From positions 62,001-126,000 of IMG/VR virus record IMGVR_UViG_3300024262_006558: a DNA stretch of 64,000 nt; one strand, 5' to 3'. Shown here piece after piece: positions 18,291-60,322 of the stretch. How positions within the stretch are numbered: position 1 is the first letter of the stretch; each line of letters starts with the position of its first letter. The position numbers were made by a program, and so were the translations under genes. The notes under the pieces were generated by a model. The model worked only from the letters and a program-made list of their open reading frames with translations, did not search any database and had not been told where the DNA came from.

Positions 18291-18818
18291 TTAATAAAGA
18301 CCTCCGTCTAACGTGTCTCCAGATAGAAAAATATTATGCTCCGTCATTTCCCTTGTGCCTAATAATATTTTAGTGCTTGCTGTAAAATTGGTAGCTATAC
18401 CATTTTTAGTGTGCAAGTTCCTAAATCTCTTAAAGGCATTACCTATATCCACCGTATCATCTGCTATAGGATCAATACTATAACTAGCGTTTATCGTGCT
18501 TGAAGTTATAGTTGTTGATAATAAGGATGATGCCGTTGTAGATCCTGTAAAATTATAAGGACCTCCAGTGCCTCCAGATAATGCTAGGTATAAACCTAGA
18601 TCACTAGAAGTGCCTATAGATTCCCATGTAGGAACCGTCTTGTCCTTTAAAATATATAACTGCTTTTCAGTTTCAACAAAAACTTGAAGGCCATTAAATT
18701 CTCTACCTGAGCCAATTAAACTGTCTCTGGATGTAATACCAGTAGCGACATACCTATCTCCATCGATAGGGTCAGCTCCTGCTATTCTTACTCCAAAAGG
18801 TAAATTAAAAAATGCCAT
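18291..18818 (-). CDS. Virion appendage protein sharing its N-terminal domain with the next gene
   Basis: MAFFNLPFGVRIAGADPIDGDRY is identical to the N-terminus of 18833..20821. Confidence 0.7.
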   Translation of the reverse strand: MAFFNLPFGVRIAGADPIDGDRYVATGITSRDSLIGSGREFNGLQVFVETEKQLYILKDKTVPTWESIGTSSDLGLYLALSGGTGGPYNFTGSTTASSLLSTTITSSTINASYSIDPIADDTVDIGNAFKRFRNLHTKNGIATNFTASTKILLGTREMTEHNIFLSGDTLDGGLY

Positions 18819-18832
18819 TAAATTATATTATC

Positions 18833-20821
18833 TTAATTAATTGTTACGCTATAGTTAGCAGTAGATGGATACCCACCCCCTCCAATTGTTGTTGTATAAA
18901 CATCATATGAAACAGGGTTGCCTCCAGCATCATCAACATTAAATGTTGTAACTGAAAAAGATCCAGTCACATCAGCATTACTACTTTCCACATAAAGGAC
19001 TGTTGCCGTCTTCCCTGCAGGAACCGCAAAGAACACTAAAGGCTCACTTGCCGCAATTGTAATAGTAAACGAACCATTATTACTTCCATTTAAGAAAACT
19101 CTATCTGTACCAGTTCTTACCTCACTTGAGTTTGCTGGCAATATTCCAGTATCATAAAAGCCATAATACCTACCTGTTATAGTATTTGAGTTATCCGATA
19201 CGTTTCCAGCAACCCTACTACCATCTAAAGAAGTGTCTACACCACCTTTTGAATCGTAATAAAGTCCTGTTCCAATATCATGATTTACTAAAACGTTCCA
19301 AACATTAGACCCAAAGGCAACTTGTGAAGTTGTGAAACCTGTATCACTTGTTGTGATTGAAGTTGGGTTCGTTGAAGTGTCTACAACTGAAGTTGTTGAT
19401 ATACCTGGTCCAGTAAATGTAAATTTATTAGCAAGACCTACTAAATCTGGTCCAGAACTTCCATCACCATTCTCAATGTCACCCTGATTAAAAGTAGCAG
19501 TTAAAGTAGGGTCTAAAGTAGTACCCACCTCAACTGTAGACAATGAAGGTGTAAAAGATAAAATTACAGACTTAGCTACAGATATTGTAGAGAATACTGT
19601 AGGGAATAAGTAATTATCTATAAAATCTGAAAAAGTTTGCCCAGTAACATCACCAACAGTCAGGCCTCCTGGTATTGTCCAACCAGGTGAAGTAGTTGCT
19701 GGAGGTATAGATGAAGTGTATGTATCTTGATAGTTTATCCCTTTAAACAGCTCACTCATATTAGTGCCACCAGAATAGATGGTTGTAGCACTTAATATAT
19801 TAAGTTCAGTTGTTCCAGTGACTTCTAAATCATAAAAAGTACCACCAGTAATATTTACTGTTGGATTTAAGTCGGTACCTCCAGTATAAGTGTTTATACC
19901 ATCCTGTACACGAGTAACATCTAATTGCTCCGTTTCTGAAGCAATATTTCTAATTATAGTGTCAAGATCTGTAGATCCAGAATAAATAGTATCTCCAGAA
20001 ATGTTAGTAGCATAAAACCCTACATTTGAGTGCCAGTCTCCAGCATCATCAGAAAGTATGCTCGATGAACTGCCGTCAGTCTGTCCAGAAATTAATGTAA
20101 TACCTCCACCTACAGCGCTTATATGACTTCCGCTATAATTAAGATCAATGTTATTATCCTTAGTTTGAACAACTTCAGTGTTTAAAGTCGTGGCCGTACC
20201 TAATACTTCTAAATTTCCAGTGATGGAAACATTACCACTTATAGTTCCGCCAGATTTATCATATTTAGAAGAAACATCTAAATTACTTATAATATCTCCT
20301 AAATCTGTACTTCCTGAATAAAATGTAGTTGCGCTAATTGCTCCCTGAGCAAAAGCGTTTGGCATATAAACAGTATCTTCAGAAGTTCCAGTAATTCCAG
20401 TCCCTCCTAAAATTGTAGAGCCAGTAGCTGAATTAATCAGTAAACCTCCCTGCCCTCCTATTATAGAAGAGTAATTTCCATTTACTGTCCCACCTGTTCC
20501 TCCAGCTATAAAAGAGAAATCTCCAGAAGCAGTATTATCTCCCTCTACAGTGGAAATTGATCCGTTTACCGTATTAGCTGAGAAAGGGGATGTTGCCCCA
20601 GTCAAAGCTGAAGACCCTACTACATCCCAAGTACCTAGAGCCTTGTCTACTAATATGTATAATGTTTTATCAGATTCAACGAAAACTTGAAGTCCGTCAA
20701 ATTCTCTACCTGAACCAACTAAACTATCTCTTGTAGCTAAATCTACAGCTATATATCTATCTCCATCGATAGGGTCAGCTCCTGCTATTCTTACTCCAAA
20801 AGGTAAATTAAAAAACGCCAT
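18833..20821 (-). CDS. Mosaic virion appendage protein (662 aa)
   Basis: N-terminus shared with 18291..18818, middle with 1602..4493, C-terminus with 20851..21927. Confidence 0.7.
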   Translation of the reverse strand: MAFFNLPFGVRIAGADPIDGDRYIAVDLATRDSLVGSGREFDGLQVFVESDKTLYILVDKALGTWDVVGSSALTGATSPFSANTVNGSISTVEGDNTASGDFSFIAGGTGGTVNGNYSSIIGGQGGLLINSATGSTILGGTGITGTSEDTVYMPNAFAQGAISATTFYSGSTDLGDIISNLDVSSKYDKSGGTISGNVSITGNLEVLGTATTLNTEVVQTKDNNIDLNYSGSHISAVGGGITLISGQTDGSSSSILSDDAGDWHSNVGFYATNISGDTIYSGSTDLDTIIRNIASETEQLDVTRVQDGINTYTGGTDLNPTVNITGGTFYDLEVTGTTELNILSATTIYSGGTNMSELFKGINYQDTYTSSIPPATTSPGWTIPGGLTVGDVTGQTFSDFIDNYLFPTVFSTISVAKSVILSFTPSLSTVEVGTTLDPTLTATFNQGDIENGDGSSGPDLVGLANKFTFTGPGISTTSVVDTSTNPTSITTSDTGFTTSQVAFGSNVWNVLVNHDIGTGLYYDSKGGVDTSLDGSRVAGNVSDNSNTITGRYYGFYDTGILPANSSEVRTGTDRVFLNGSNNGSFTITIAASEPLVFFAVPAGKTATVLYVESSNADVTGSFSVTTFNVDDAGGNPVSYDVYTTTIGGGGYPSTANYSVTIN

Positions 20822-20850
20822 TTTATTTTTTTTATTTAAATTATTATTTA

Positions 20851-21927
20851 CTAAACTATTGTTACATTATAAGTTGCGTTAGACGGGTATCCCCCCCCTC
20901 CAATTGTTGTTGTATAAATATCATATGATACAGGATTGCCTCCAGCATCATCAACATTAAATGTTGTAACTGAAAAAGATCCAGTCACATCAGCATTACT
21001 ACTTTCCACATAAAGAACTGTTGCTGATTTACCCGCTGGAACTGCAAAAAACGCTAAAGGTTCATTTGCAGATATAGATATATTAAAACTACCAGCATTA
21101 CTTCCACTTAAAAAACTTTTACTAGACCCAACTCTTACTTCATTTGAATTTGTTGGTAATATCCCAGTATTATAAAAAGCATAATACCTTCCCGTTATAG
21201 TGTTTGAGTTGTCTGAAACATTTCCAGCAACTCTATTTCCATCTAAATTGCTGGCAATATTACCTTTTGAATCAAAATAAACACCCGTACCTATACTATG
21301 TATTATGTTTACACTCCAAATATTAGAACCAAATACAGCTTTAGATATTTCATAACCTGGGTTTGATGTATTTATATTTATAGGAGAAGACATTGAACTT
21401 ATCACAACAGAAGTCGCGATCCCTGGACCAGTAAAGGTGTAGGTATTTGGTAAACCCACTAAACTTGGCCCAGCAGATCCGTTCCCGTTCTGAATTTGCC
21501 CTTGATTAAATGATGCTGTTAAAGTTTCATTTAATGAAGTTCCAACCTCTACCGTATTTAATGTAGGAGTAGCTATTAGTTGTCCTGATTTATTTGAAGA
21601 TATACTTGCGTCCGTAGTAGGGAACACATAGTTATCTATAAAGTTTGAAAATGTTTGCCCTCTTATATCCTCTACAGTAGTTCCGACTGGAACATTGATT
21701 CCTGGAGAAGTGGTTCCGCTAAATAAATTGGTTTCATATATTGTAGCAGCAGTTAGGGTTGACGCTGTTGTTAAGAATATATTAGATATATCAGTATCTC
21801 CAGAGTAAATGGTGCCACCAGATAAAGTGCTGCCACTAATTCCATTAGTAAAGTTTGTCAAACCAGTTACGGTTCCACCTGACAAATCTAAAAAATTACC
21901 CGAAGGAAATATGTATCTACCAGCCAT
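20851..21927 (-). CDS. Virion appendage protein, paralogous to the C-terminal half of 18833..20821
   Basis: Near-identical ATVLYVESSNADVTGSFSVTTFNVDDAGGNPVSYD...GGGGYPS. Confidence 0.7.
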   Translation of the reverse strand: MAGRYIFPSGNFLDLSGGTVTGLTNFTNGISGSTLSGGTIYSGDTDISNIFLTTASTLTAATIYETNLFSGTTSPGINVPVGTTVEDIRGQTFSNFIDNYVFPTTDASISSNKSGQLIATPTLNTVEVGTSLNETLTASFNQGQIQNGNGSAGPSLVGLPNTYTFTGPGIATSVVISSMSSPININTSNPGYEISKAVFGSNIWSVNIIHSIGTGVYFDSKGNIASNLDGNRVAGNVSDNSNTITGRYYAFYNTGILPTNSNEVRVGSSKSFLSGSNAGSFNISISANEPLAFFAVPAGKSATVLYVESSNADVTGSFSVTTFNVDDAGGNPVSYDIYTTTIGGGGYPSNATYNVTIV

Positions 21928-24564: not shown

Positions 24565-24624
24565 ATAACAGAAAATAAAAGATAACTCTTCGAGTCGCTT
24601 AACGCTTATCTTTATTTTCGTGTT
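24565..24624 (-). repeat. Terminal hairpin site of array A, inverted copy of 60263..60322
   Basis: The reverse complement matches 60263..60322 at 59/60 nt. Confidence 0.95.
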
Positions 24625-24688
24625 GTATGCCATTAAAACGGTACGCTCGTACCTCGCCATACAACATGGTATATAAAACATACACTCA

Positions 24689-24847
24689 CTACCACTTTTC
24701 TTCTTTAAGAATTATAGGGTCAAAGGCGTAACCTAAATACGCCTTATACAGTTCAGGTCTTATCCAACCCCTATGTTTAGTTTTTAACCAAATTCCTTTT
24801 TTTATACGCCTTATTATGCGTATTTCATTCCATATACTTGTTATCAT
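24689..24847 (-). CDS. 52-aa basic, Trp-rich peptide encoded inside a hairpin loop
   Basis: Hand translation MITSIWNEIRIIRRIKKGIWLKTKHRGWIRPELYKAYLGYAFDPIILKEEKW. Flanked by arms gtatataaaacata / tacgtttcatatac. Confidence 0.6.
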   Translation of the reverse strand: MITSIWNEIRIIRRIKKGIWLKTKHRGWIRPELYKAYLGYAFDPIILKEEKW

Positions 24848-24890
24848 AATCCGTTCGTTTTACGTTTCATATACTTACCGTTGTAACACA

Positions 24891-25181
24891 TTAGCCAACT
24901 CTCGCTAAGTGCTTTCTAAAATCTTCGTTTTCCTTTTCCATAAATTCAGTAGCCTTTTGCATACATTCAATTAGGTTGTGGTTCTTGGTTTCTATTATTT
25001 CAGCAACTCCTTTCCATTGTCTTACTTCAGATGGGCTACCTTTGTCGCTTACATTTATGAAATAACCATCTTCATAGTCATACATAAAACAGATATTTCT
25101 TTCTTTTGCCAACGCTTCAAAACGTGTTACAACATTTTGTATAGTGCATGGCTTAATTTCGTTTTCTTTATTAGTGTTCAT
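24891..25181 (-). CDS. Cassette hypothetical protein (starts in loop, reads through the site)
   Basis: CTIQNVVTR is encoded by the hairpin arm and GTT. Confidence 0.65.
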   Translation of the reverse strand: MNTNKENEIKPCTIQNVVTRFEALAKERNICFMYDYEDGYFINVSDKGSPSEVRQWKGVAEIIETKNHNLIECMQKATEFMEKENEDFRKHLARVG

Positions 25182-25263
25182 CCTTATTTAAGTTTTTGGT
25201 CATTTATTTAATTAGCGGTTTCAAATCGCCACGACACCATACAAGATGCCGTTGTGTGTAATA

Positions 25264-25473
25264 CTAGCAACTACCATATCTGAAACTCCCAAATCCTTCA
25301 CCTTCGTATTCAGAATCAATAAAGAACCCTAATTTATCAAGTTCCTCAATATCATCCTTGCTCACTAATTCAGGGTCAATAGCTACATAAAAGTAGTCGT
25401 GTTCACAATGGCTTGGGTTTCTTGGGTTGCCATATTTTAAAAGTATTTGTAATGCTTTAATTAAATCTTCCAT
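25264..25473 (-). CDS. Cassette hypothetical protein
   Basis: MEDLIKALQILLKYGN...HCEHD. ATG at 25473. Confidence 0.7.
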   Translation of the reverse strand: MEDLIKALQILLKYGNPRNPSHCEHDYFYVAIDPELVSKDDIEELDKLGFFIDSEYEGEGFGSFRYGSC

Positions 25474-25612
25474 CTTTCTATTTAGTTTGTGGCTTAAATT
25501 CCGTACTACACACAACAATGTATATAGTTTATAAGCCTAATTAATATTATTTTTCAATTTGTAAATTTGTGCTATGGCTTACAAAACCATATACTCAACG
25601 TTATGCTTAACA

Positions 25613-25864
25613 CTATTGCATTAATTCTAACATAGCGTCTATACCATGTATTTGTTTAGTTGCTTTGAGTGTATCGTCTTCTTTGCTCTCTATATTTAAA
25701 GAGTAGCTTTTGCCATAACAAACTACTTTATCACTATGTATGTGGCAAAATCCAGCACTTATAGGTTCAAGGTGTTTAAAAGTCGAGTGTTCTATTGTTG
25801 TCGGGAAAATTATAATTTCGTCATATTCTCCTAATCTTACGTATTTCTGTTTTGTATCGTACAT
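25613..25864 (-). CDS. Cassette hypothetical protein
   Basis: KYV...IIIFP..IEHS...PISAGFC....CYGKSYSLNI pattern, typical of small phage proteins. Confidence 0.7.
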   Translation of the reverse strand: MYDTKQKYVRLGEYDEIIIFPTTIEHSTFKHLEPISAGFCHIHSDKVVCYGKSYSLNIESKEDDTLKATKQIHGIDAMLELMQ

Positions 25865-25960
25865 TTTCAATTTTAGTTTAGTGGTTTAACAATCCGTGAT
25901 AAGCATAACACAACCTATAAAGCCAAAAAAAAGGCTTATAGCTTTGTGCATTAGGCACAA

Positions 25961-26185
25961 TTAAGAAACGAACTCATTAAATTCATCTTCCTTAATTTCT
26001 CGTGCTTTACTATTCGTTACACCACCATACTTTTTAGATACCTTTAAAACCGCATCATCTTCATTTAATGCAAATGTGTAAGCACTCGAAGGTGTACAGT
26101 AAGGTCTTGATACCCTATAAAATTTAACTGTGCCTAACATTGTGTATAGCACATTGCTTTCGGTGTTTTTTGATACTGTATTCAT
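25961..26185 (-). CDS. Cassette hypothetical protein (reads through site)
   Basis: VLYTMLGTV is encoded by the arm and GTT. Confidence 0.6.
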   Translation of the reverse strand: MNTVSKNTESNVLYTMLGTVKFYRVSRPYCTPSSAYTFALNEDDAVLKVSKKYGGVTNSKAREIKEDEFNEFVS

Positions 26186-26257
26186 AGTTTTAAGTTTTTT
26201 ATTTTCAATTTAAGTTAGTGAGGCAACGCGCCATACACTCGTTCGTTATAGTGCATA

Positions 26258-26440
26258 TTATTGCTTTACTTCTTTACCACAATCAAAACACTCGTATTCT
26301 GTTTCGCTTATTGGTTTTTGCATACTTGGCTGCACACAATCGCAATAAAACGTACCCTTCGGCACAATAACATTATCTATATTTAATAGCTTGTTTTCTG
26401 CTTCCTTTTTACCTTCGTTGTACATTTGAAAATCATTCAT
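26258..26440 (-). CDS. Cassette Cys-rich small protein (reads through site)
   Basis: LNIDNVIVP crosses the site. Contains CxC...CxxC. Confidence 0.6.
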   Translation of the reverse strand: MNDFQMYNEGKKEAENKLLNIDNVIVPKGTFYCDCVQPSMQKPISETEYECFDCGKEVKQ

Positions 26441-26500
26441 AATTCATATTTTTAAGTTATTAATCGCTACTAAAACATAGACCTTACATTATATTTAATG

Positions 26501-26698
26501 CTACTTATGTAGTTCTAAACAACGGTATCTAAAATTATATTCATCGTACCAAAAACTTCTACAATTCCACATATTTATAGCATCCCCATAAACATTATTA
26601 TCAAACTTTAACCCTCTTTCTTCTGCTTGTTTGCAACTGTCTATCACTTTAAATCTGTGATAAAAGCATACAGTCATAAATCTTAATATTTTTTTCAT
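26501..26698 (-). CDS. Cassette hypothetical protein
   Basis: 65 aa, with NVYGDAIN..NCRS.W. Confidence 0.65.
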   Translation of the reverse strand: MKKILRFMTVCFYHRFKVIDSCKQAEERGLKFDNNVYGDAINMWNCRSFWYDEYNFRYRCLELHK

Positions 26699-26792
26699 TT
26701 TATCTATTTTGTTTTTAGTTAATTAACCGCACTAAAATATAACACGGTATAAAATGGCATTAAAACGCCATCTATACAACCGTTATATGCAA

Positions 26793-27101
26793 TTATAGTT
26801 TTAGTATTTGTTTAATGTCTGAATAACTAAACGTGCTACTTTTGAATTGATTCTTATCATTAGGGTTATACTTACCTATTTTATGACAATCTCTTTGTAT
26901 ATGATACAATAAATCACCAGTAGCGTACAGACTGCCATCTTTATTTATGCTGTAAACTACCCCTTCTTTTACCGTGTACAAATCTCTTCTTGCAACATAA
27001 TCTCTACCACAATAACACAAAGATATTTCCGCAAACAACCCACCTTCAAGCTCTCCACTTATTCTTAAATTTTCGGATAGTTCTTTTTCTATTAAATCCA
27101 T
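26793..27101 (-). CDS. Cassette hypothetical protein
   Basis: 102-aa ORF bounded by complementary ends. Confidence 0.65.
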   Translation of the reverse strand: MDLIEKELSENLRISGELEGGLFAEISLCYCGRDYVARRDLYTVKEGVVYSINKDGSLYATGDLLYHIQRDCHKIGKYNPNDKNQFKSSTFSYSDIKQILKL

Positions 27102-27256
27102 TCTATTAAGTTTATCGGTTAATAATCAACTGCATACAGCATATAGTAAACGGCAATACAAAACTTCTACTTTAACATTATGAGCAACATTTTAACCATT
27201 TCTTTATTTGTGGTTATTTATCCGTAAAATAAAACATTTTATAGCTGTACTCATTA

Positions 27257-35714: not shown

Positions 35715-36275
35715 ATGAACGCATTAGAAAGGCTAAAAAAACATTTTTTCATAAAACTATATACTTTTTCAGAGTATAGAGATTATATAGATGATGAGCA
35801 TGATGAAACAATGGATTTCATTGAAGAGTCTTACGGTATAAATGGTTTAGTATTGATTGCTTGGAGAGGTGAGTATATGGTTGATTCTCATATAACAGAA
35901 ATATATCCCTCACTAGAAGATTTGGGTATACTTGAAGAATGTGAAGGTTTCATGGTGTCTTCTGGAATACCTGAAAAAGACATGCTTGAAAGTAAGTTAA
36001 ATGCTATGGGGTTTAAAACGAATATGGAAGACATGGAACCACTATCAGATCAGCTATTCTATAAATTAATAGACGAGATAGATGAAATGGACGAGAGTGA
36101 AAGAGGGGGCATGGCTCAAGGCTATACTACTATTTCAGATCTAATGGCAGGTAAAACTAAAGAAGAAATTGACATAGAGAGATATACTCGGTTTTTAAAT
36201 AAAGCTGTAGAGGAAGAGGATTATATATTAGCTGCAGAGTTTAGAGATAAACTAAAAGAGGTCACGGGTGAATGA
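35715..36275 (+). CDS. Acidic protein with C-terminal UVR (UvrB/UvrC) motif
   Basis: LNKAVEEEDYILAAEFRDKLK. Confidence 0.65.
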   Translation: MNALERLKKHFFIKLYTFSEYRDYIDDEHDETMDFIEESYGINGLVLIAWRGEYMVDSHITEIYPSLEDLGILEECEGFMVSSGIPEKDMLESKLNAMGFKTNMEDMEPLSDQLFYKLIDEIDEMDESERGGMAQGYTTISDLMAGKTKEEIDIERYTRFLNKAVEEEDYILAAEFRDKLKEVTGE

Positions 36276-36886
36276 TTGACTGGATTTACTGTTTAGACCT
36301 TTTTGGTACTGGCATTTTCGCTATATCTGGAGTATTGATGGCGATTAGAAAAAAGTTTGACCTGGTCGGAACTTTAGTTATTGGTTTCGCAACCGCAGTC
36401 GGTGGCGGAACCATAAGAGATTTATTAATAGGAGTAAGTCCAGTTGGCTGGCTAAATGATAGAAATTATTTTATTGCAATAATATTTGGATACATCATAA
36501 CTTATGCATTTAAAAACAATATTATACAATTTAAACGTAGCATGTTCATATTTGATACTATAGGTATTGGAGTATTTACTATACTTGGGATAGAAACTAC
36601 TATGTCACATAATCTTAATATAGAAATTTGTTTAATAATGGGGGTTATTTCCGCTTGTTTTGGAGGTGTTATAAGAGACGTTCTCACAAATGAGGTGCCA
36701 TTGATATTTAGAAGAGAGATTTACGCATCAGCATGCTTGGTAGGAGGAATAACATACCTTTTATCATCAAAACTAAGCTCGTATAGCGATCTAAATGTAA
36801 TAACTTCTATTTTAGTTGTAATATGCATAAGATATCTTTCAGTAAAATATAAGTGGACACTAAACACGACATTCAAAAAGAAATAA
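36272..36886 (+). CDS. TRIC/UPF0126 (YadS-like) membrane protein
   Basis: FAISG, TAVGGGTIRDLL, FDTIG.GVF, ACFGGVIRDVL..EVPL; about 7 TM segments. Confidence 0.9.
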   Translation: MIDWIYCLDLFGTGIFAISGVLMAIRKKFDLVGTLVIGFATAVGGGTIRDLLIGVSPVGWLNDRNYFIAIIFGYIITYAFKNNIIQFKRSMFIFDTIGIGVFTILGIETTMSHNLNIEICLIMGVISACFGGVIRDVLTNEVPLIFRREIYASACLVGGITYLLSSKLSSYSDLNVITSILVVICIRYLSVKYKWTLNTTFKKK

Positions 36887-49229: not shown

Positions 49230-49874
49230 ATGAAAAAGCCAACTATAAACATATATTCAATAACAAGCTCTAATCAAAATTCATGTATATACATAGGAGT
49301 AACTTCTAGGAGTTTAAAAATTAGACTTTCTGAACATATTAGAAATAATACTGGAACATGTTTCAAACAATGGTTGGAGCAAGAAATTAGCCAAGGTCAT
49401 GAAATTTTTATTAACACACTAGATGTTGTATATAAAAAAGAGTCTAAATTTTGGGAAGGGTTTTGGATATGTAACTTTAAATCCTGGGGGTTTACAACCC
49501 TAAATTCAAATATTGGAGGAGGTGGCCCTCTTTATATGACTACACAACAAAAAGAGAAAATGAGTCTTTGTAAGAAGGGTGTGAAAAACCCTTTTTATAA
49601 TAAGAAGCACACAAAAATTTCTAAAGAAAAAATAAGCTGTAACAACTCCAGGTATTGGAAAGGTAGAAAATTAAGACCAGAAATGGTTAGAAAACTTTCT
49701 GAATCCAACTCTATACCAGTGGATCAATTTGATAAATTAGGGAACTTTATAAAGCATTGGAGCTCTATAACAGAGGCTTCAAACATATTGGGTATAGACT
49801 CAAGTTCAATCGTTAAAGTGTTAAAAAACAAAAGAAAAAAAGCAGGAAACTATGGATGGAAATATAAAAAATAG
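49230..49874 (+). CDS. GIY-YIG homing endonuclease with NUMOD3/NUMOD1 domains
   Basis: IYSI...IYIGVT...RL.EH, NPFYNKKHT..SKEKIS, SITEAS..LGI....I..V......AG.Y.WKY. Confidence 0.85.
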   Translation: MKKPTINIYSITSSNQNSCIYIGVTSRSLKIRLSEHIRNNTGTCFKQWLEQEISQGHEIFINTLDVVYKKESKFWEGFWICNFKSWGFTTLNSNIGGGGPLYMTTQQKEKMSLCKKGVKNPFYNKKHTKISKEKISCNNSRYWKGRKLRPEMVRKLSESNSIPVDQFDKLGNFIKHWSSITEASNILGIDSSSIVKVLKNKRKKAGNYGWKYKK

Positions 49875-50607
49875 ATTTGTTATTATCACCCCTTTCTATA
49901 ACCCAGGGGAGTTTTTAGATATTTGTGTTAGAAGCGTCATGACTCAAAAGTATGATGACTTTAAAGTTATTTTCATAGATGATGCGTCTACAGATGACTC
50001 ATGGGACAAGTTGCCACATGAAGATAGTAGAGCAGTTTGCATTCGTAATGAAGAAAATCTTACCGCGCTGGAAAATATCCATAACGCCACCATGAATCAT
50101 TGCGATCCAGATGATATTATTGTATTAGTTGATGGTGATGACTGGTTAAGTTCAAACAAAGTTTTAAATTACCTTAATGATTTTTACAATGAAAATGATT
50201 GCTGGATTTCTTACGGACAAGCCTCTTGGACTAACGGGATGAGAGGTATAGCTAGGCCTATGCCAAAAGAGGTATTTGAAAATATGAGAGAGCACTCTTT
50301 TTACATTTCTCATATAAGAACCTACAGAGCTGGACTGTATCAGAAGATTCAGGAACAAGATGAAAATTTTTCTTGCATGAAAGATAAAGATGGTAAATTC
50401 TATCGATGCACTTACGATGTAGCTATTATGTATCCTATTATGGAAATGGCTGGATATGACAAGACGAAGTATAACGATAAACCTTTGTACATATACAATA
50501 GAGATAATCCAATTTCTGATGATAGAGTTAGACAGGGCATGCAATGGCAAATACATCAAGAAATACTTAAAAAGACAGCCTTTAAAAAGATTGAAAGCTA
50601 TAAATAG
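49852..50607 (+). CDS. Glycosyltransferase family 2
   Basis: IITPFYN, IDDASTD, VDGDDW. Confidence 0.9.
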   Translation: MDGNIKNRFVIITPFYNPGEFLDICVRSVMTQKYDDFKVIFIDDASTDDSWDKLPHEDSRAVCIRNEENLTALENIHNATMNHCDPDDIIVLVDGDDWLSSNKVLNYLNDFYNENDCWISYGQASWTNGMRGIARPMPKEVFENMREHSFYISHIRTYRAGLYQKIQEQDENFSCMKDKDGKFYRCTYDVAIMYPIMEMAGYDKTKYNDKPLYIYNRDNPISDDRVRQGMQWQIHQEILKKTAFKKIESYK

Positions 50608-51056
50608 TGAAAAAGATATTCTACATATCTCAATGCCCGCTACCGCATCCTAACTTAGACCTTGAAAGTGAGGTAGGTGAATTCATTGAAAAATTTATTC
50701 ACCTACCTTTTATTCATCAAACAAATGCGTGGTATGAGAAAAGATTTAATGAAGCTATAGACGCTTTTAATTCCCAGAGAGATAGTATAGGCAACGATCT
50801 ATTTAATACTGGAGGTAAGATGAGATTAAAAAGGGATTCAATATTATGGATCAGGAAAATTGCTCATATAAAAATTAAAATCGACCTTCTTGAAGGTATG
50901 GAAATAAATAATTCAGAATCAACCCCTATATACAATCAAAAGTTTATAGAAAAAAAGATTCTAAAATTAGAAGGGGATTTAAAATTAAACACACTTTTCC
51001 CTTTTCACAATTACGCTAATAGGTTTGATATAGCAAATGGAGGAATGGTAGTATAA
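50607..51056 (+). CDS. Hypothetical protein
   Basis: 149-aa ORF in operon. Confidence 0.55.
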   Translation: MKKIFYISQCPLPHPNLDLESEVGEFIEKFIHLPFIHQTNAWYEKRFNEAIDAFNSQRDSIGNDLFNTGGKMRLKRDSILWIRKIAHIKIKIDLLEGMEINNSESTPIYNQKFIEKKILKLEGDLKLNTLFPFHNYANRFDIANGGMVV

Positions 51057-51058
51057 TT

Positions 51059-51970
51059 ATGGTAAATAACCCGAAAAATATGATAGATGAAATCAATGAT
51101 AACATCTTCGATTATGATTCTGTAAAAAAAGACAGTATAATAATCATTCAAAACCCTGATGAAATTTATGACATCAATGTTATAATTCCAGTGAAAGGTA
51201 GAAGGGAGTTTGCTCTACCTATGTACAACAGCTTTGTGGCAGCTAGGGAAAGTAGCGGTTTAAACATAACATATACAATAGTTGAATTTTCTGATATACC
51301 TGAGCATTCACAATTTTGTAAGAATAATAAAATAAATTATTTATGGATCCCCAGCAAGCCTGGAGACCTGTTTAATAAATGCCTAGCATTCAATATAGGG
51401 GTATTCTTTAGTAATAGAGCAAAGTATATTTTAATGCATGATATAGATTGTTTAATGCAATCTGATTTTTTTGTAAAACTAGAAGAGAATGTATCAGTTA
51501 AGAAATGTAAAGCAATACAATGCTTTACAGGGAGAAGGGTCCTATATTGTAATTCAGAATTGACTTCAAAAATTATAGATGGAAATTTCGACATTGACAA
51601 CCTAAGTATAGATATGCCAGAGGTTGATTACCCTAGGATGGGAGGTCAAATAATGATAGGAGCTCCAGGGGGATCCATCATGATTGATAGGGAATTGTTT
51701 TTTGAAGTTGGAGGTTATGATCCAGAATTATTTCAAGCCAATTCCCCAGAAGACGCATTCTTTTGGGAGAAAGTTAATACTATTTCTAAGATGGAAACAG
51801 CAAATGAGCCAGACATAGAAATATACCATATGTTTCACCCCCCTACATATTATAGCAATCCTAAACTGCAAGACATGCAAGCTATACATCAATACTTCCA
51901 AAGAATGGATACTGATAGTAAAAAAAAAGTGATTGACTATAAATCAGATTTAATAAAAAAATATAAATAA
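51059..51970 (+). CDS. GT-A glycosyltransferase (GT2/GT7C-like)
   Basis: VIIPVKGR, FNK..AFNIG, HDID, VGGYD.......ED..F, H.FHP. Confidence 0.8.
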   Translation: MVNNPKNMIDEINDNIFDYDSVKKDSIIIIQNPDEIYDINVIIPVKGRREFALPMYNSFVAARESSGLNITYTIVEFSDIPEHSQFCKNNKINYLWIPSKPGDLFNKCLAFNIGVFFSNRAKYILMHDIDCLMQSDFFVKLEENVSVKKCKAIQCFTGRRVLYCNSELTSKIIDGNFDIDNLSIDMPEVDYPRMGGQIMIGAPGGSIMIDRELFFEVGGYDPELFQANSPEDAFFWEKVNTISKMETANEPDIEIYHMFHPPTYYSNPKLQDMQAIHQYFQRMDTDSKKKVIDYKSDLIKKYK

Positions 51971-51971
51971 T

Positions 51972-53162
51972 ATGACACCCACCTGGAAAGATGTAATGAA
52001 ATTTGAATTGCCTGATAACCCTATTATTTTTGATATAGGAGGATTTAATGGAGACTGGACCCAAATAGCGTTAGATGAATATACTGCACCAACGATTTAT
52101 GTGTTTGAGCCTGTAAAGCAGTTTTATGAAAAAATCAAAAAAAGATACGCCGATAAAAAAAATGTTAAAGTATTTCATTTTGGATTATCTGACTCCACAA
52201 CATCTTTGGAAATTTCTGTATCTGGAGACGCCTCTTCTGTATTTAAGACAAATGGCGCCTCAGAAACTATACAGCTTAAAAGCATTGTTGAATTCATGAA
52301 GGAAGAGGGGGTTTACCATGTTGATCTTGCTAAGATCAACATAGAAGGGGAAGAATATAGACTCTTAGAGCACTTGGTAAAACTGCCTGAACTAAACATT
52401 TTTAACAATTTTTTAATACAATTTCATAAGTTTGTAGACAATTACGAAGAGAGAAGAAGGCTAATTCAAAAGGAGTTATCTAAATATTATGACATGCCTT
52501 TTAATTTTGAAATGATCTTTGAAGGATGGTCTAATAAAAAGGTTGAATTGATTAATTGTGTAGGAGATAGTCATGTTAGCAATTTTGCTAACACAGAAAA
52601 ATTGACTGATATGAAAGTGCCGTCTATCAATAATATGTTTAAAACTTATAGAGCTGGCCCGTACACTGCTTTTAATGTAAATCAAAAAAGCGATGTTAAA
52701 AACTATATAGAATCTATTAGCGATAAAGAGTCTTTACTTATTTGTTTTGGGGAAATAGACTGCAGAGCGCAAGTGAAAAAGGTAATGGAAAATACCAACA
52801 GGAAATATAGAGAAGTGATAGACGAAATTATAGATAACTATATAGATATAATTCAAAACTTTAAAGGTGACAATGTATATTTATGCTCAATAACCCCATG
52901 CATAGAGGATAAACCTCACTGGTACTACTATGAATCTCACCAGGAAGCCTTTGACTGCCCTAAAGGGACTAAGGAAGAAAGAAATTCATATAAAGAATAT
53001 TTTAATGAAAAATTAAAAAGTATATCTTCAAAAAAAGGATATAAATTCATTAGCATTTTTGACTATGTCAAAGATAGAAAAGATTTTTACCTAGATGATA
53101 TACATCTATCTCCAAAAAAAGTTAATTACTTAATAAGAAGGGAGGTACTAAAATTAGCATAA
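51972..53162 (+). CDS. FkbM-family methyltransferase fused to SGNH-hydrolase-like domain
   Basis: DIGGFNG, FEP, KINIEGEEY; then GDSH, FGEIDCR, DDIHL. Confidence 0.8.
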   Translation: MTPTWKDVMKFELPDNPIIFDIGGFNGDWTQIALDEYTAPTIYVFEPVKQFYEKIKKRYADKKNVKVFHFGLSDSTTSLEISVSGDASSVFKTNGASETIQLKSIVEFMKEEGVYHVDLAKINIEGEEYRLLEHLVKLPELNIFNNFLIQFHKFVDNYEERRRLIQKELSKYYDMPFNFEMIFEGWSNKKVELINCVGDSHVSNFANTEKLTDMKVPSINNMFKTYRAGPYTAFNVNQKSDVKNYIESISDKESLLICFGEIDCRAQVKKVMENTNRKYREVIDEIIDNYIDIIQNFKGDNVYLCSITPCIEDKPHWYYYESHQEAFDCPKGTKEERNSYKEYFNEKLKSISSKKGYKFISIFDYVKDRKDFYLDDIHLSPKKVNYLIRREVLKLA

Positions 53163-53959
53163 TGAAAGACATAATAGTAAAAAGTAATTGGGGCATGAAA
53201 GTTAATCTACAACATGAAAAACAAATATATCTTTTTGTTGATGATTTATCTGGAGCGAACACTCAAGTTGACGGTGTTAAGATTTTGTATTTATGTGAGC
53301 CAAATGAAATTTCAGGATTAGCTCAAAAAGCTATTTTAGAAAGCAGCAAATTTGATTACGTATTAACCCATGAATCAACAGTGTTAGACAGATGTAAAAA
53401 TGCTGTACTGTTTGAATTTGGAGGTTGTTGGATTCAAGGATATGAGTTCCCAGAAAAAGAGTTCTCAGTTTCAACAATCGTAGGTTTTAAGAAAATGGCT
53501 GAAGGTCATCTATTAAGACATAATTTATGGATTAGACAAGATGCTATAACTACTCCTAAAAAGTTCTTTATTAGCGGTAATGATCCTCACCACTTAAGGA
53601 TGCCAGCATTTGGAGAAAACCCAGTATTGGAAGGGGAAAAAACCCCATTGTTTGATAGCATGTTTCATATTGTTATTGAAAACTGTAAGAAAGACAATTG
53701 GTTTACAGAAAAGTTAATAGACACATTACAAACGAAGACATTACCTATTTACTGGGGATGCCCTAATATAGGTAACTGGTTCAATACTGACGGGATGATA
53801 ATAGTTAATAATGTTGACGATCTTATTGAGCAAGTAAATAAATTAACCCCAGAATTATATCAAGAAAAACTTTCTTTTATTGAAAGAAATTACGAAAAAT
53901 CCAAAGAGTTTATTAACTTAAGTGATAGGGTTGCAGATAAATTAAAAGAGATTTTATAA
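53162..53959 (+). CDS. GT10 (alpha-1,3-fucosyltransferase-like) protein
   Basis: FHIVIEN....WFTEKL.D......PIYWG.PNI. Confidence 0.75.
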   Translation: MKDIIVKSNWGMKVNLQHEKQIYLFVDDLSGANTQVDGVKILYLCEPNEISGLAQKAILESSKFDYVLTHESTVLDRCKNAVLFEFGGCWIQGYEFPEKEFSVSTIVGFKKMAEGHLLRHNLWIRQDAITTPKKFFISGNDPHHLRMPAFGENPVLEGEKTPLFDSMFHIVIENCKKDNWFTEKLIDTLQTKTLPIYWGCPNIGNWFNTDGMIIVNNVDDLIEQVNKLTPELYQEKLSFIERNYEKSKEFINLSDRVADKLKEIL

Positions 53960-54032
53960 TGAGGGTCATAGGAAACTATTTTTTCACCATTCTAGAAAAA
54001 GGGGAAGTTTGAAACTTTAAAATATATTGAAA

Positions 54033-54824
54033 ATGTATAAAAATATTGTCACATCTCAACTTGCTGGAGGCCTTGGCAACTATTTATTTCAAATAGCTGC
54101 AGCATACTCTTATGCTCTAAAGCATGGCAAAAAGCCAGTTTTTAACACTAATTTATCCATAAAAGTTCACAGGGGAATAGAATGTTATTTTGACAACATA
54201 CTTCGATCGATAGAGAAGAAAGATACGGTAGCAACTCAGACCACAATTGGTGAACAAGGATTTCAATTTACAGAATTGCCTTTTGTTGCAAATGGAGTAG
54301 CTTTAACTGGATATTTTCAATCTGAAAAATACTTTAAGGAATACGAAAAAGAGATTAAAGATCTCTTTTCCTGCCCTGATCACATAAAAGAATCTATAAA
54401 CAAAAGATTCCCTAGTATGGATAGTGTGGAATCATGTTCTATACATGTCCGCAGAGGTGACTATGTAAAACTGCAAGATATACACCCAGTTCAGAGCATG
54501 CCTTACTTTATGAAAGCTTTAAATAAGATGCCAAAAGATTGTAGCATATTTGTTTTTTCTGATGATATAGAGTGGTGTAAAAATTCTTTCCCAGATATGG
54601 GGGAAAGAATTCATTTCGTAGAAGGATATTCCGATGTAGAAGATTTGTATTTAATGTCAATGTGTGATCATAACATTATTTCAAATAGCACTTTTTCATG
54701 GTGGGCTGCCTGGTTAAATGATAATCCTAAAAAAATAGTAGTGGCTCCAAAGAAATGGTTTGGGCCAATGAACTCTCATTTAGATACAAAGGATATTTAT
54801 CCAGAAAAATGGGAGAAAATATAA
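54033..54824 (+). CDS. GT11 alpha-1,2-fucosyl/colitosyl-transferase
   Basis: GGLGNYLFQ, GYFQSEKYF, HVRRGDY, FSDDI.WC, NSTFSWW.AWL. Confidence 0.92.
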   Translation: MYKNIVTSQLAGGLGNYLFQIAAAYSYALKHGKKPVFNTNLSIKVHRGIECYFDNILRSIEKKDTVATQTTIGEQGFQFTELPFVANGVALTGYFQSEKYFKEYEKEIKDLFSCPDHIKESINKRFPSMDSVESCSIHVRRGDYVKLQDIHPVQSMPYFMKALNKMPKDCSIFVFSDDIEWCKNSFPDMGERIHFVEGYSDVEDLYLMSMCDHNIISNSTFSWWAAWLNDNPKKIVVAPKKWFGPMNSHLDTKDIYPEKWEKI

Positions 54825-57382: not shown

Positions 57383-57395
57383 TAAAACACATATA

Positions 57396-58489: not shown

Positions 58490-58581
58490 CGGTTTGGCTA
58501 TGTGCTGAACGTAGAGCAACGGAGTTTTGCATATAGCTAGTGTTATATGCTTTTAATTATTAACAACTAAAGATTATAAAA

Positions 58582-58932
58582 ATGAGTGAAACAGTACATT
58601 ACAGAGGGATTGCTACTAAAATTGAGCAACCAAACGACAAGACATTAATTGATGTCGCAAAAAGTATTTTAACAGAACGTAACAAAGAAATAGCCGACTA
58701 TTATGACAATGTAATAGAGTGTTTGTGTGATAGCTATTATAGAGAATTTTTCTACCATTCAAAAACACAGACCCTTTACAAATTAGACAATAATGAATAC
58801 GAGCCTGATGAAGATATAATAAGAGCAGAACCGAAAGAAAACGGGACTATTGAATATGAGTTAAGATATTATAACGGTGGTGCTGGATTTGATGAATGTA
58901 TGGAAGAGGCTTTTGATAAGCTCGATGCTTAA
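58582..58932 (+). CDS. Cassette hypothetical protein
   Basis: MSETVHYRG...YYNGGAGFDE; bounded by gttatatgc/gcatataac. Confidence 0.75.
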   Translation: MSETVHYRGIATKIEQPNDKTLIDVAKSILTERNKEIADYYDNVIECLCDSYYREFFYHSKTQTLYKLDNNEYEPDEDIIRAEPKENGTIEYELRYYNGGAGFDECMEEAFDKLDA

Positions 58933-59036
58933 TTGCATATAACGGCATCCTGTATGATGTCGTGAAACGAAGTGGAATGCATTCATACACCGTGTTGTGT
59001 GTAGTGCGGATTATTAACTGATAACAAAATTAAAAG

Positions 59037-59216
59037 ATGAATGTATTTGATGAATTTTTAATGGAATCTGAAAAGGAACAATTAAAAGACAACCGACTGA
59101 AAGAACAGAAAGATAAAAAAGACTACTCGTATGAACACGATGGTAGAATAGAAACATGTGACGATTGTAGAACACCTATAAACTCACACGGACACTGCCC
59201 TAGATGCGATTACTAG
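59037..59216 (+). CDS. 59-aa cassette protein with CxxC...CxxC zinc finger
   Basis: Hand translation ends TCDDCRTPINSHGHCPRCDY. Confidence 0.65.
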   Translation: MNVFDEFLMESEKEQLKDNRLKEQKDKKDYSYEHDGRIETCDDCRTPINSHGHCPRCDY

Positions 59217-59267
59217 CATTACACACAACGGATGGTAATATGAATAGTGCGGATTAAAAACATAAAA

Positions 59268-59435
59268 ATGGCAAAGACACGAGAACAAAAAAGAATTGAA
59301 AGTGCGGATAAAGTTTGTAGAGAACTTAGATACCAAATAGTTAAATATGGATTGATAGGTGATTGGGACGCATTAAATAAGCACTTTAATTCTTGGATGA
59401 ATAACGCTAAGAAATCTAAATACGACAGACCCTAG
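59268..59435 (+). CDS. 55-aa protein inside a hairpin loop
   Basis: MAKTREQKR..., between arms gtaatatgaatagtgc and gcattatttatattac. Confidence 0.6.
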   Translation: MAKTREQKRIESADKVCRELRYQIVKYGLIGDWDALNKHFNSWMNNAKKSKYDRP

Positions 59436-59514
59436 CATTATTTATATTACGTGTTGTGCGCACGTTTTAATTGCGACACAACGCTAAGTATAACAAACGG
59501 AAAATTTACGACTT

Positions 59515-59673
59515 ATGAGATTTGAATTAATGCAATGGAAATGGTATAGGAAGTGGAAAGGTGGCTCTTATTACCTTATATGGAATTGGCTACCTATGAA
59601 CACTTTTTGGAGCGACAAACTTATTACAAGCTGTGGAGGCAGAGCCATTAAAGAGGAACACTACCCTAAGTAA
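59515..59673 (+). CDS. 52-aa Trp-rich peptide inside a hairpin loop
   Basis: MRFELMQWKWYRKWKGGSYYLIWNWLPMNTFWSDKLITSCGGRAIKEEHYPK. Confidence 0.6.
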   Translation: MRFELMQWKWYRKWKGGSYYLIWNWLPMNTFWSDKLITSCGGRAIKEEHYPK

Positions 59674-59791
59674 ATTTTATGTTTTGTTATACAATGTTGT
59701 ATGGCAAAGCGTACCGTTTTAATGGCATACAACGGTTGAGTATAAACGTAGTGTTTAACTGAACTTAATTTGAAACACAAAACTTAAAATT

Positions 59792-59992
59792 ATGATAAAA
59801 AGATTGATTGAAAAACTGAAAACATTACGTTTATACTTTGTTAGAAAACGTTGTTTTGAGGTGTATTTCACAGATACCAAAAGTGGAAAGGAAGGAAGAA
59901 TTAATTTATGGGTGAAAGATGTCGATGAAGTAGAACCTTACTTTGAAAAACACTTTCCACATTTGGAATTATATGATATAGGAGAATGTTGA
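59792..59992 (+). CDS. Cassette hypothetical protein (reads through site)
   Basis: TLRLYFVRKR is encoded by the arm and the GTT at 59840. Confidence 0.65.
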   Translation: MIKRLIEKLKTLRLYFVRKRCFEVYFTDTKSGKEGRINLWVKDVDEVEPYFEKHFPHLELYDIGEC

Positions 59993-60102
59993 TTACAATG
60001 TTTTCTAACGACCTGTGTAAAATTTCGTGTGAGGCACGAGCAATGAATTTTAAACCTTGTTAGCGTTTCGTTTTTGAGCGTTGGCATTTAAAAACTAAAA
60101 AG

Positions 60103-60264
60103 ATGAAAGTAAGTATTCAGTTCACAAAAGAAGAATTAAGATTATTAAAAAAGGCGTTATTTTTTGGAATAACACATAATGAAAACAACCAAGAAGCAAA
60201 TAAAATGAATGAATTAGATGCGAAAATGAATTTACTGTGTGCGTTGGCAGAAAATGAACGCTAA
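60103..60264 (+). CDS. 53-aa cassette protein
   Basis: MKVSIQFTKEELRLLKKALFFG...; the TAA overlaps the TAAC of the terminal site. Confidence 0.6.
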   Translation: MKVSIQFTKEELRLLKKALFFGITHNENNQEANKMNELDAKMNLLCALAENER

Positions 60265-60322
60265 CACGAAAATAAAGATAAGCGTTAAGCGACTCAAAGA
60301 GTTATCTTTTATTTTCTGTTAT
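60263..60322 (+). repeat. Terminal hairpin site of array B, inverted copy of 24565..24624
   Basis: aacacgaaaataaagataagcgttaagcgactcaaagagttatcttttattttctgttat. Confidence 0.95.

What the first reader, a model, noticed from the sequence alone, without database searches (positions are those of the whole stretch)
24565..27140. Second, oppositely oriented cassette array (array A) with the same grammar
Seen: eight units with complementary ends, e.g. gttgtaacac 24880 / gtgttacaac 25133, gttgtgtgtaatac 25251 / gtactacacacaac 25516, gttatgctta 25600 / taagcataac 25909, gttatagtgc 26245 / gcacaataac 26371. The ORFs are on the minus strand. One arm read on the minus strand (aacggcatcttgtatggtgtcgtg, about 25230-25253) closely matches array B 58941 (aacggcatcctgtatgatgtcgtg). 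Three cores are degenerate (25950, 26488, 27140), as expected for aged or immobilised units. Inference: one system feeds several loci from a common pool.
Basis: partly seen in the sequence, partly recalled or inferred. Interest (0 to 1): 0.88.

Follow-up and report, generated by a model that had tools for sequence, protein, structure and literature searches.

The report
Helix-closed gene cassettes in phages
A giant T4-like phage of marine Flavobacteriia carries two arrays of tiny genes, each gene enclosed by its own pair of complementary ends, and identical gene-plus-ends units turn up with different neighbours in unrelated phages, so they behave as exchangeable cassettes of a kind not described before.

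Summary
On the minus strand, 27151-24565 holds eight small ORFs. Five are enclosed by unit-specific inverted repeats starting GT[T/A] and ending [A/T]AC; two have weak arms and one has none. ORF-less hairpins with the same ends fill the gaps, so 25909-24572 is tiled by consecutive helices 3-8 nt apart. Array B (58542-60322, plus strand) follows the same grammar.

Same-ORF arm pairing far exceeds non-cognate pairing. Of 31 arm mismatches, 22 are G(5' arm)·T(3' arm) on the coding strand, and arms covary between cassettes. So the sense strand, most simply the mRNA, is what pairs.

The non-coding modules are 95-100% identical in unrelated phages (Maribacter phage Panino, a 462-kb phage, many metagenome contigs). 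One 298-nt cassette is 99-100% identical in five contigs with unrelated flanks, ending exactly at AAC|G.

It is not an integron. The break point is different, the hairpin travels with the downstream ORF, the folding strand is the sense strand, no integrase lies in the window, and none of these modules occurs in bacterial genomes. The closest known kind is the PeSL regulatory cassette of T4-type phages; the cistron-closing helices are new. Exchange is shown; its mechanism is not. A dedicated site-specific system remains possible.

The parts
27139..27151 (-). Degenerate 5' arm of unit A1 (GTTTACTATATGC; 3-nt insertion relative to its partner), followed by a conserved 5'-UTR piece GATTATTAAC
26782..27101 (-). 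ORF A1 (27101-26793, 102 aa) plus 3' arm TTGCATATAAC (26792-26782). The same arm follows the unrelated ORF B2' in array B
26747..26777 (-). ORF-less hairpin unit GTATAGATGGC..GCCATTTTATAC
26488..26743 (-). Unit A2. Arms are 26743-26729 and 26501-26488 (ends AAT, giving a G·U closing pair); ORF 26698-26501, 65 aa, phrog_35589
26245..26476 (-). Unit A3 with weak arms (GTTTTAGTAGC / GCACTATAAC). ORF 26440-26258, 60 aa, resembles Panino CDS0080 (similarity judged by eye, not computed)
25916..26185 (-). ORF A4 (26185-25961, 74 aa) with no cognate arms, followed by local hairpins including the terminator-like TATAAGCC-T8-GGCTTTATA (25940-25916)
25600..25909 (-). Unit A5. Arms 14 nt, 13/14 paired; ORF 25864-25613, phrog_3988
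25520..25594 (-). ORF-less hairpin unit (19/18-nt arms, 38-nt loop). The same module precedes a different ORF in L110
25251..25516 (-). Unit A6. Arms GTTGTGTGTAGTAC / GTATTACACACAAC (one G·U); ORF 25473-25264. Same arm type as B3' around an unrelated ORF, with a compensatory A-T to G-C change
25139..25242 (-). Leader-like unit (GTATGGTG..GCACTATAC) holding the 5' UTR, the ATG and 14 codons, read in frame into unit A7. L085 has the same arms as an empty 40-nt hairpin
24880..25133 (-). Unit A7 body. Arms 13 nt with one G·U; it carries the rest of ORF 25181-24891
24669..24874 (-). Unit A8. Arms GTATATGAAACGTA / TATGTTTTATATAC (two G·U); ORF 24847-24689, 52 aa
24622..24665 (-). ORF-less hairpin GTTGTATGGC..GGCATACAAC; homologous to 59696-59733 in array B
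24565..24624 (-). 60-nt terminator-like element that closes the array. It is 98.3% identical to 60263-60322 (+) at the end of array B; only these two copies exist in the 388-kb contig
58542..60322 (+). Array B, same grammar. Units: 58542-58943, 58994-59229, 59235-59450, 59453-59482, 59488-59692, 59696-59733, 59740-59836 (leader unit), 59840-60009, 60017-60055, 60059-60265, then the terminator element. Linkers from 58994 onward are 2-7 nt

Best explanation
Array A, and its twin array B, is a hyperplastic region of a 388-kb T4-like phage of marine Flavobacteriia. It is built from exchangeable units of one cistron each.

Shown: each unit starts with a 5' arm (GT[T/A] plus 6-14 unit-specific bases), then a conserved A-rich leader, a small ORF, and a 3' arm that is the reverse complement of the 5' arm. 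The 3' arm sits on or just after the stop codon and ends in [A/T]AC. Hairpins without an ORF have the same ends. The arms pair in the sense strand. The same units and linker modules circulate among unrelated phages.

Inferred: the pairing happens in the mRNA. The array transcript would then fold into a string of closed domains, one per cistron, 2-8 nt apart, ending in a strong terminator hairpin. I propose that each closing helix makes a cistron an autonomous folding, processing and stability domain (an RNA insulator or processing stalk), so the gene works in whatever context it lands. I also infer that shuffling comes mainly from the phages' own short-homology recombination within the highly conserved linker modules (mini-hairpin + 5' arm + leader, and the 3'-arm region). 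Selection would then remove recombinants that separate an arm from its partner, which would make break points appear at the helix feet (AAC|G). This is a PeSL-like system with a new structural element, not an integron.
For: Context: the phage is T4-like (Gp23, prohead protease, gp19, PhoH). The window is 100% identical to IMG/VR contig 3300024262_006558.

Pairing is real:
- Cognate against non-cognate arm pairing: 8/15 vs 6/210, and 14/35 above the 95th percentile.
- Tiling: a chain of 7 helices against at most 3 in shuffles.

The sense strand is what pairs:
- 22 of 31 arm mismatches are G(5')·T(3') on the sense strand, with only 1 A·C. Among unrelated inverted repeats the G·T share is 54/833.
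- Covariation: A6 vs B3' (A-T to G-C), and GTTAGAAAACGTTGT/ACAATGTTTTCTAAC vs GTTAGCAAACGTTGT/..ATGTTTGCTAAC around different ORFs.
- The sense transcript's MFE contains all 6 array-A helices tested (-285 kcal/mol against -242 antisense).
- 59735-60012 folds into two adjacent closed domains in both the MFE and the centroid, z = -4.5, -63.1 kcal/mol sense against -47.3 antisense.

Exchange is real:
- Intergenic modules are shared between arrays A and B around unrelated ORFs.
- They are 95.6-98.6% identical in LR756500 and in Maribacter phage Panino.
- The leader unit occurs in 7 viral contigs, fused to 3 different ORF bodies.
- A 75-nt module occurs in 22 metagenome contigs, upstream of at least 10 unrelated ORFs that share the 3' arm.
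- A 298-nt cassette is 99-100% identical in five contexts.

Short-homology recombination is active in these phages: indels between near-identical contigs are flanked by 16-45-nt direct repeats of leader + ATG.

Precedent: PeSL cassettes in T4-type phages (PMC2839356, PMC4122927).
Against: - No transcript data exist. The G·T pattern would fit a folded sense-strand ssDNA equally well.
- The precision of AAC|G ends next to flanks with no homology, and the strict tiling, are what a dedicated site-specific mechanism would produce. General recombination explains them only with the added assumption of selection.
- Helices occur only in the accessory arrays, not around core genes. That fits a mobility function at least as well as an expression function.
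- About 40% of ORFs in the arrays lack convincing arms.
- No nuclease or RNA-binding partner has been identified.
- No host-type promoter was recognised in the modules.
Confidence: 0.5

Rival explanations
1. A dedicated, structure-guided, site-specific cassette system: integron-like in logic, or HUH/Y1-like, but a different family. An unidentified enzyme recognises the hairpin formed by a cassette's two arms in single-stranded sense-strand DNA. It cuts and joins at AAC|G, excising cassettes and inserting them next to other units, which builds the tiled arrays.
For: - A 298-nt cassette is 99-100% identical in five contigs whose flanks are unrelated right up to AA(C/T)|G and AAC|G.
- The same ends appear in the window-L085, window-L096/L099 and L103-L110 comparisons.
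- GT[T/A]/[A/T]AC feet are conserved on otherwise variable arms.
- The arrays are strictly tiled.
- 'Empty' hairpin units have the same ends.
- Joined into a circle, the cassette ends form a perfect attC-like palindrome.
- Strand asymmetry is what single-strand recombination systems show.
- Panino encodes a 185-aa tyrosine recombinase although it is virulent.
Against: - No recombinase or HUH protein was found among 30 window ORFs of at least 150 aa.
- No cassette-bearing contig is among the best 80 of 440 viral hits to the Panino recombinase family.
- In Panino the recombinase gene lies 29 kb from the array.
- The carriers are very different phages (45 kb to 462 kb) with no known shared enzyme.
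- The modules are absent from bacterial genomes.
- Other indels in the same phages are plainly repeat-mediated.
- Unrelated ORFs inside identical arms, bracketed by an 11-nt direct repeat, need break points inside the unit as well.
Confidence: 0.25
2. Ordinary PeSL-type cassettes only. The functional elements are local intergenic hairpins (terminators or attenuators) plus leaders. ORFs have been inserted into hairpin loops, so the ORF-flanking complementarity is a leftover with no function of its own.
For: - ORF-less hairpins with the same ends are common.
- One hairpin that is empty in L085 encloses a leader and the start of an ORF in the window.
- Different ORFs sit inside the same arms.
- PeSL crossovers inside a stem-loop's loop are documented (PMC2839356).
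Against: - Leftover arms should decay with all kinds of mismatch. Instead 22/31 are sense-strand G·T against 1 A·C, and arms covary.
- Arms are kept over loops of 200-430 nt in several unrelated genomes.
Confidence: 0.12
3. Small transposable elements with terminal inverted repeats (MITE-like), or REPIN-like doublets mobilised in trans by a RAYT or IS200/IS605-type Y1 transposase.
For: - The units have terminal inverted repeats and a conserved short head (GT[T/A], compare GTAG of REP).
- They cluster like BIMEs.
- The asymmetry points to a single strand.
Against: - There are no target-site duplications at unit ends.
- Arms are unit-specific rather than one repeated sequence.
- No transposase was found in the window.
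- The elements are absent from bacterial genomes.
Confidence: 0.06
4. Chance inverted repeats in AT-rich intergenic DNA.
For: Inverted repeats of 10 nt are abundant in the window (1446).
Against: all reject chance.
Confidence: 0.01

Closest known systems
PeSL (promoter-early stem-loop) regulatory cassettes of T4-type phages (Arbiol et al. 2010, PMC2839356; Comeau et al. 2014, PMC4122927)
   Same: - Sits in hyperplastic regions of a T4-like phage.
- Small ORFan genes are separated by conserved composite non-coding motifs that contain stem-loops.
- The same motif flanks unrelated ORFs.
- Indels and replacements have break points in the motifs.
- The authors themselves compared PeSLs to integrons.
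   Different: - Here each cistron is enclosed by its own long-range complementary arms with GT[T/A]/[A/T]AC feet, wobble-only mismatches and covariation.
- The arrays are tiled by such helices.
- No sigma70-type promoter is recognisable.
- The modules are shared at 95-100% identity by phages that are not T4-like (Panino at 77 kb, a 45-kb contig, 462-kb phages).
Integron gene cassettes and attC sites
   Same: - Tandem, co-oriented, promoter-less single-ORF units.
- Each unit's first bases are complementary to a site near its end.
- Conserved GTT/AAC triplets.
- Recognition would have to be by structure, since the sequences vary.
- The asymmetry points to a single strand.
- Cassettes are drawn from a shared pool.
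   Different: - The boundary is AAC|G rather than G|TT.
- The hairpin lies upstream of its ORF and is often absent.
- Complementarity runs 9-17 nt, not 6-7.
- The folding strand is the ORF sense strand.
- No IntI, attI or Pc was found.
- The hosts are virulent phages, and the modules are absent from bacterial genomes.
Long-range processing stems flanking 16S and 23S rRNA (RNase III substrates), and RNase III sites between phage T7 early genes (established knowledge, not tested here)
   Same: Complementary sequences on both sides of a functional RNA segment pair to close it off within a polycistronic transcript.
   Different: - Here the stems enclose protein-coding cistrons.
- They are short (9-17 bp).
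- Cleavage has not been shown.
REPIN/BIME elements with RAYT transposases
   Same: Hairpin-forming inverted doublets with a conserved short head, clustered in intergenic DNA.
   Different: REPINs are many near-identical copies without cargo in bacterial chromosomes. These units have unit-specific arms, carry ORFs and are found only in phages.

Membership tests
Integron | IntI-type tyrosine recombinase next to the array | tested here: not met
   Pfam scan of 30 window ORFs of at least 150 aa found no PF00589. Array A is flanked by tail genes and array B by sugar-modification genes. The other 324 kb of the contig could not be read.
Integron | A local attC imperfect palindrome (R''-L''-L'-R', about 57-141 nt) at the 3' end of every cassette, moving with the upstream ORF | tested here: not met
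   Several junctions have no hairpin (e.g. 59229-59235, 26488-26476). Where one is present, it stays with the downstream ORF across genomes.
Integron | Cassette boundary inside R' at G|TT | tested here: not met
   Conserved blocks begin right after AAC and end at AAC (AAC|G) in five or more independent contexts.
Integron | The recombining folded strand is the bottom strand (antisense to cassette ORFs) | tested here: not met
   The wobble-tolerant strand is the ORF sense strand: 22 G·T against 1 A·C.
Integron | Match to the attC covariance model (IntegronFinder) | not testable with these tools
   The model is not in Rfam. Rfam gave no hit in the window.
PeSL cassettes | Lies in hyperplastic regions of a T4-type genome, between small ORFan genes | tested here: met
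   Gp23, gp21-type protease, gp19, PhoH. The ORFs are 52-116 aa and mostly without family. Sheath relatives lack an array at this place.
PeSL cassettes | A conserved composite motif with a stem-loop that flanks unrelated ORFs and marks exchange points | tested here: met
PeSL cassettes | A strong host-type early promoter within the motif | tested here: inconclusive
   Reading the modules by eye, I found no Bacteroidota -33/-7 consensus. The only promoter scan on hand is sigma70-type and was not run, as it does not cover this host.
PeSL cassettes | Mini-circles formed by recombination between flanking motifs | not testable with these tools
   Needs inverse PCR on infected cells.
TIR transposon / MITE | Target-site duplication flanking the terminal inverted repeats | tested here: not met
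   Bases outside the arms differ on the two sides of every unit.
REPIN-RAYT / IS200-IS605 | Y1 HUH transposase, and many near-identical palindromic copies | tested here: not met
   No such Pfam hit (ORFs under 150 aa outside the arrays were not scanned). Arms are unit-specific.

The most novel reading that the evidence does not exclude
Virulent phages of marine Flavobacteriia share a true cassette-mobility system. An as yet unknown enzyme recognises the hairpin made by a cassette's own two ends in single-stranded sense-strand nucleic acid and exchanges cassettes precisely at AAC|G. This would be a phage counterpart of the integron that arose independently, with its own site grammar.
Probability: 0.25. 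Interest if true: 0.9.

Novelty: new variant of a known kind. Interest (0 to 1): 0.72.

Why it matters
How phages gain and swap their many small accessory genes is a long-standing question. PeSLs are the only described cassette-like device, and they are known only in T4-type phages of Proteobacteria.

Here the exchangeable unit has a sharply defined physical form: a cistron closed by its own helix. Identical units are shared by phages of very different types and sizes that appear to infect the same host group.

If the helices act in RNA, they are a natural 'insulator' that makes a gene portable. That is of interest for RNA biology and for synthetic design. If instead they guide recombination, this is a new site-specific gene-capture system.

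An isolated phage-host pair carries a small array (Maribacter phage Panino on M. halichondriae), so both ideas can be tested directly.

Tried and rejected
- Rfam (gathering thresholds) and tRNA scans of the window: nothing.
- Near and distant DNA search of array A against GenBank phages: only short ORF-level hits.
- Relatives found through the tail sheath (29 loci, 39-100% identity): apart from the source contig and its near-identical sister (100%), none has an array next to the sheath gene, so they gave no presence/absence comparison.
- Pattern TAGTGCGGATTANNAAC in viral contigs: 50 hits, all chance except the window's own contig.
- One viral scan was wasted on a pattern that did not fit the window.
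- Homologues of ORF B2' in more distant phages (L086-L091) carry no arms, so the arms belong to a phage lineage or pool, not to the protein family.
- Panino's small tyrosine recombinase as the candidate enzyme: the family is widespread, but no cassette-bearing contig was among the 80 listed of 440 hits. Inconclusive.
- Bacterial and archaeal genomes: no true match to the module.
- A mutation-bias explanation for the G·T excess: rejected by argument, because it would need a strand asymmetry of more than 20-fold (22 G·T against 1 A·C at G-C pairs).
- Literature searches for a prior description of ORF-flanking helices in flavobacterial phages: none found.
Full report
**What the window is.** It encodes a Gp23-type capsid protein, a gp21-type prohead protease, a gp19-type tail tube protein, PhoH and a 793-aa tail sheath. 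The only nucleotide relatives of that stretch among GenBank phages (about 66% identity) are Flavobacterium phages. It is therefore a very large T4-like phage of a Bacteroidota host. Array A lies between tail genes. Array B lies inside a cluster of glycosyltransferase and sugar-nucleotide genes.

**The observation.** Read on the minus strand, 27151-24565 holds eight small ORFs of 52-102 aa.
- Five are enclosed by unit-specific inverted repeats that begin GT[T/A] and end [A/T]AC: A2, A5, A6, A7 and A8. Their arms are 13-15 nt.
- Two have weak arms (A1, A3) and one has none (A4).
- The 3' arm lies on or within a few bases of the stop codon. The 5' arm lies about 30-45 nt upstream of the ATG, followed by a conserved ..GCGG-ATTAATAAC-A-rich leader.
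- Hairpins without an ORF have the same ends (26777-26747, 25594-25520, 24665-24622).
- One unit (25242-25139) holds only a leader, an ATG and 14 codons, read in frame into the next unit.
- As a result, 25909-24572 is completely tiled by eight consecutive helices with 3-8-nt linkers. It ends in a 60-nt terminator-like element that is 98.3% identical to the one ending array B.
- Array B is tiled the same way from 58994 to 60315.

**Statistics.**
- Arms of at least 9 nt between the two sides of the same ORF occur in 8 of 15 ORFs, against 6 of 210 non-cognate combinations. Three of those six arise because two cassettes share an arm type.
- With unconstrained scoring over 35 ORFs from four genomes, 14 cognate helices exceed the 95th percentile of non-cognate pairs.
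- GTT/GTA-headed repeats of at least 13 nt: 6 in the 4.8 kb of arrays, 1 in the other 59 kb.
- Chains of adjacent helices reach 7 in array A and 4 in array B. The maximum is 3 in 200 dinucleotide shuffles and 2 in 40 control pieces.

**Which strand pairs.** I tallied mismatches inside arms in the window, L085, Panino and LR756500. Of 31 mismatches, 22 are G in the 5' arm opposite T in the 3' arm on the ORF sense strand. Only one is the antisense equivalent (A·C). Among 833 mismatches in unrelated inverted repeats, this class is 6.5%. A mutation bias would need a strand asymmetry of more than 20-fold, so pairing of the sense strand is under selection.

Arms also covary:
- A6 and B3' differ by A-T against G-C at arm position 13, around unrelated ORFs.
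- GTTAGAAAACGTTGT/ACAATGTTTTCTAAC becomes GTTAGCAAACGTTGT/..ATGTTTGCTAAC around a different ORF.

Folding agrees. The MFE of the sense transcript of 25960-24600 contains all six helices tested (-285 against -242 kcal/mol for the antisense). The stretch 59735-60012 folds into two adjacent closed domains in both the MFE and the centroid (z = -4.5; -63.1 against -47.3 kcal/mol).

**Exchange between genomes.** The intergenic modules of arrays A and B are homologous, while the ORFs they flank are not.
- **ORF B2' (phrog_6035, 96 homologues).** In contig L085 it keeps its arms (GTTATATGC/GCATATAAC) and its upstream hairpin, but has different neighbours. Similarity starts and stops at AAC|G. L085 carries a whole array with the same grammar. 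A 94%-identical copy has only the 3' arm. More distant homologues have no arms.
- **Leader unit 59740-59836.** It is 95.6% identical in the 462-kb phage LR756500. It occurs in seven viral contigs, fused in frame to three different ORF bodies, always preceded by a different ..AAC.
- **Module at 60014-60086.** A 73-nt stretch is 98.6% identical in Maribacter phage Panino. There it sits in a five-ORF array inside the virion genes, next to an ORF that resembles window ORF A3 (similarity judged by eye).
- **The same module in metagenomes.** It occurs in 22 metagenome contigs. Nearly every copy is preceded by a different ORF end plus AAC-G. It is followed by at least ten unrelated ORFs, most of which end in the same 3' arm (..TTGGCAAATGAACGCTAAC, which encodes LANER-stop). 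An 11-nt direct repeat, GAGCGTTGGCA, brackets the variable part.
- **A 298-nt cassette.** It is 99-100% identical in five contigs whose flanks on both sides are unrelated (47-66% in global alignment). Its ends are exactly AA(C/T)|G and AAC|G.

**How exchange happens.** Near-identical contig pairs show indels flanked by 16-45-nt direct repeats of leader + ATG + first codons (L103/L110, L104/L123, L112/L122). One replacement has its ends at AAC|GG. Short-homology recombination is therefore active in these phages, as in the PeSL system of T4-type phages. The linker modules are long and conserved enough to serve as crossover sites. Crossovers within shared modules, plus selection against recombinants that split a helix, can produce the observed pattern.

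The precision of the AAC|G ends and the strict tiling are equally what a dedicated structure-guided recombinase would give, so I keep that as the main rival at 0.25.
- No recombinase was found in the window.
- Panino's 185-aa tyrosine recombinase belongs to a family common in flavobacterial phages. No cassette-bearing contig was among the 80 listed of 440 hits, which is inconclusive.
- The modules are absent from 185,579 bacterial and archaeal genomes.
- Only two arrays with the shared terminal element exist in the 388-kb contig.

**Comparison with known systems.** Membership in the integron family fails on four tested features: the boundary position, the placement and presence of the hairpin, the folding strand, and an adjacent integrase. 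The logic does resemble an integron: co-oriented single-ORF units with self-complementary ends, drawn from a pool. The transposon and REPIN readings fail on target-site duplications and on arm uniformity.

The closest known kind is the PeSL regulatory cassette. The new elements are:
- the cistron-closing, unit-specific helix with conserved feet and wobble-only mismatches;
- the tiling of whole arrays by such helices;
- leader-only units that supply a start to start-less bodies;
- sharing of modules among phages of unrelated types.

I found no earlier description.

**Verdict.** My best explanation is helix-closed exchangeable cistron modules, acting in RNA and shuffled by the phages' own recombination (confidence 0.5). 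The function of the helix is inferred, not shown.

Noticed in passing
window 49230-49874 (+): A GIY-YIG homing endonuclease with NUMOD1/NUMOD3 domains (seg-like), just upstream of the glycosyltransferase cluster.
   Followed up: partly
window 49852-63608 (+): A large phage-borne sugar-modification cluster. It includes GT2, GT10-like and GT11 (fucosyltransferase-like) enzymes, an FkbM methyltransferase, a GDP-mannose 4,6-dehydratase fusion, an epimerase and a DegT aminotransferase. Array B is inserted in the middle of it.
   Followed up: partly
window 57826-58183 (+): About 360 nt upstream of array B with no convincing ORF. It contains a 16-nt-armed inverted repeat (57930-58057). Rfam and tRNA scans found nothing.
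   Followed up: partly
window 18639-19315 and 20642-21333: Two copies of a ~690-nt segment at 79.5% identity, inside neighbouring large minus-strand genes of unassigned function (no Pfam hit); an internal duplication.
   Followed up: no
window 36272-36886 (+): A phage-encoded membrane protein with two glycine-transporter (PF03458) repeats, which is unusual cargo.
   Followed up: no
L095 31797-32354 (Panino CDS0116): A 185-aa tyrosine recombinase consisting of the catalytic domain only, in a virulent phage. The family (175-195 aa) is common in flavobacterial phages and in Bacteroidota genomes. Its role is unknown.
   Followed up: partly
window 60076-60086 and 60239-60249; L103-L122: A direct repeat (GAGCGTTGGCA in most contigs; only GCGTTGGCA, 9 nt, in the window's second copy) brackets the variable leader + ORF inside the conserved GTTAGCGTT/AACGCTAAC arms. 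The 3' copy can also form a local hairpin with the 3' arm, giving an alternative pairing.
   Followed up: partly
L103 about 700-900: tRNA-like sequence (T-loop GGTTCGATTCC) lies within a segment that replaces a cassette between AAC|GG boundaries, relative to L110.
   Followed up: no
window 25181-24891 and 59792-59992: Two ORFs run in frame across a unit boundary, from a leader unit into a body unit. The 17-residue leader MIKRLIEKLKTLRLYFV is conserved across phages while the body changes.
   Followed up: partly
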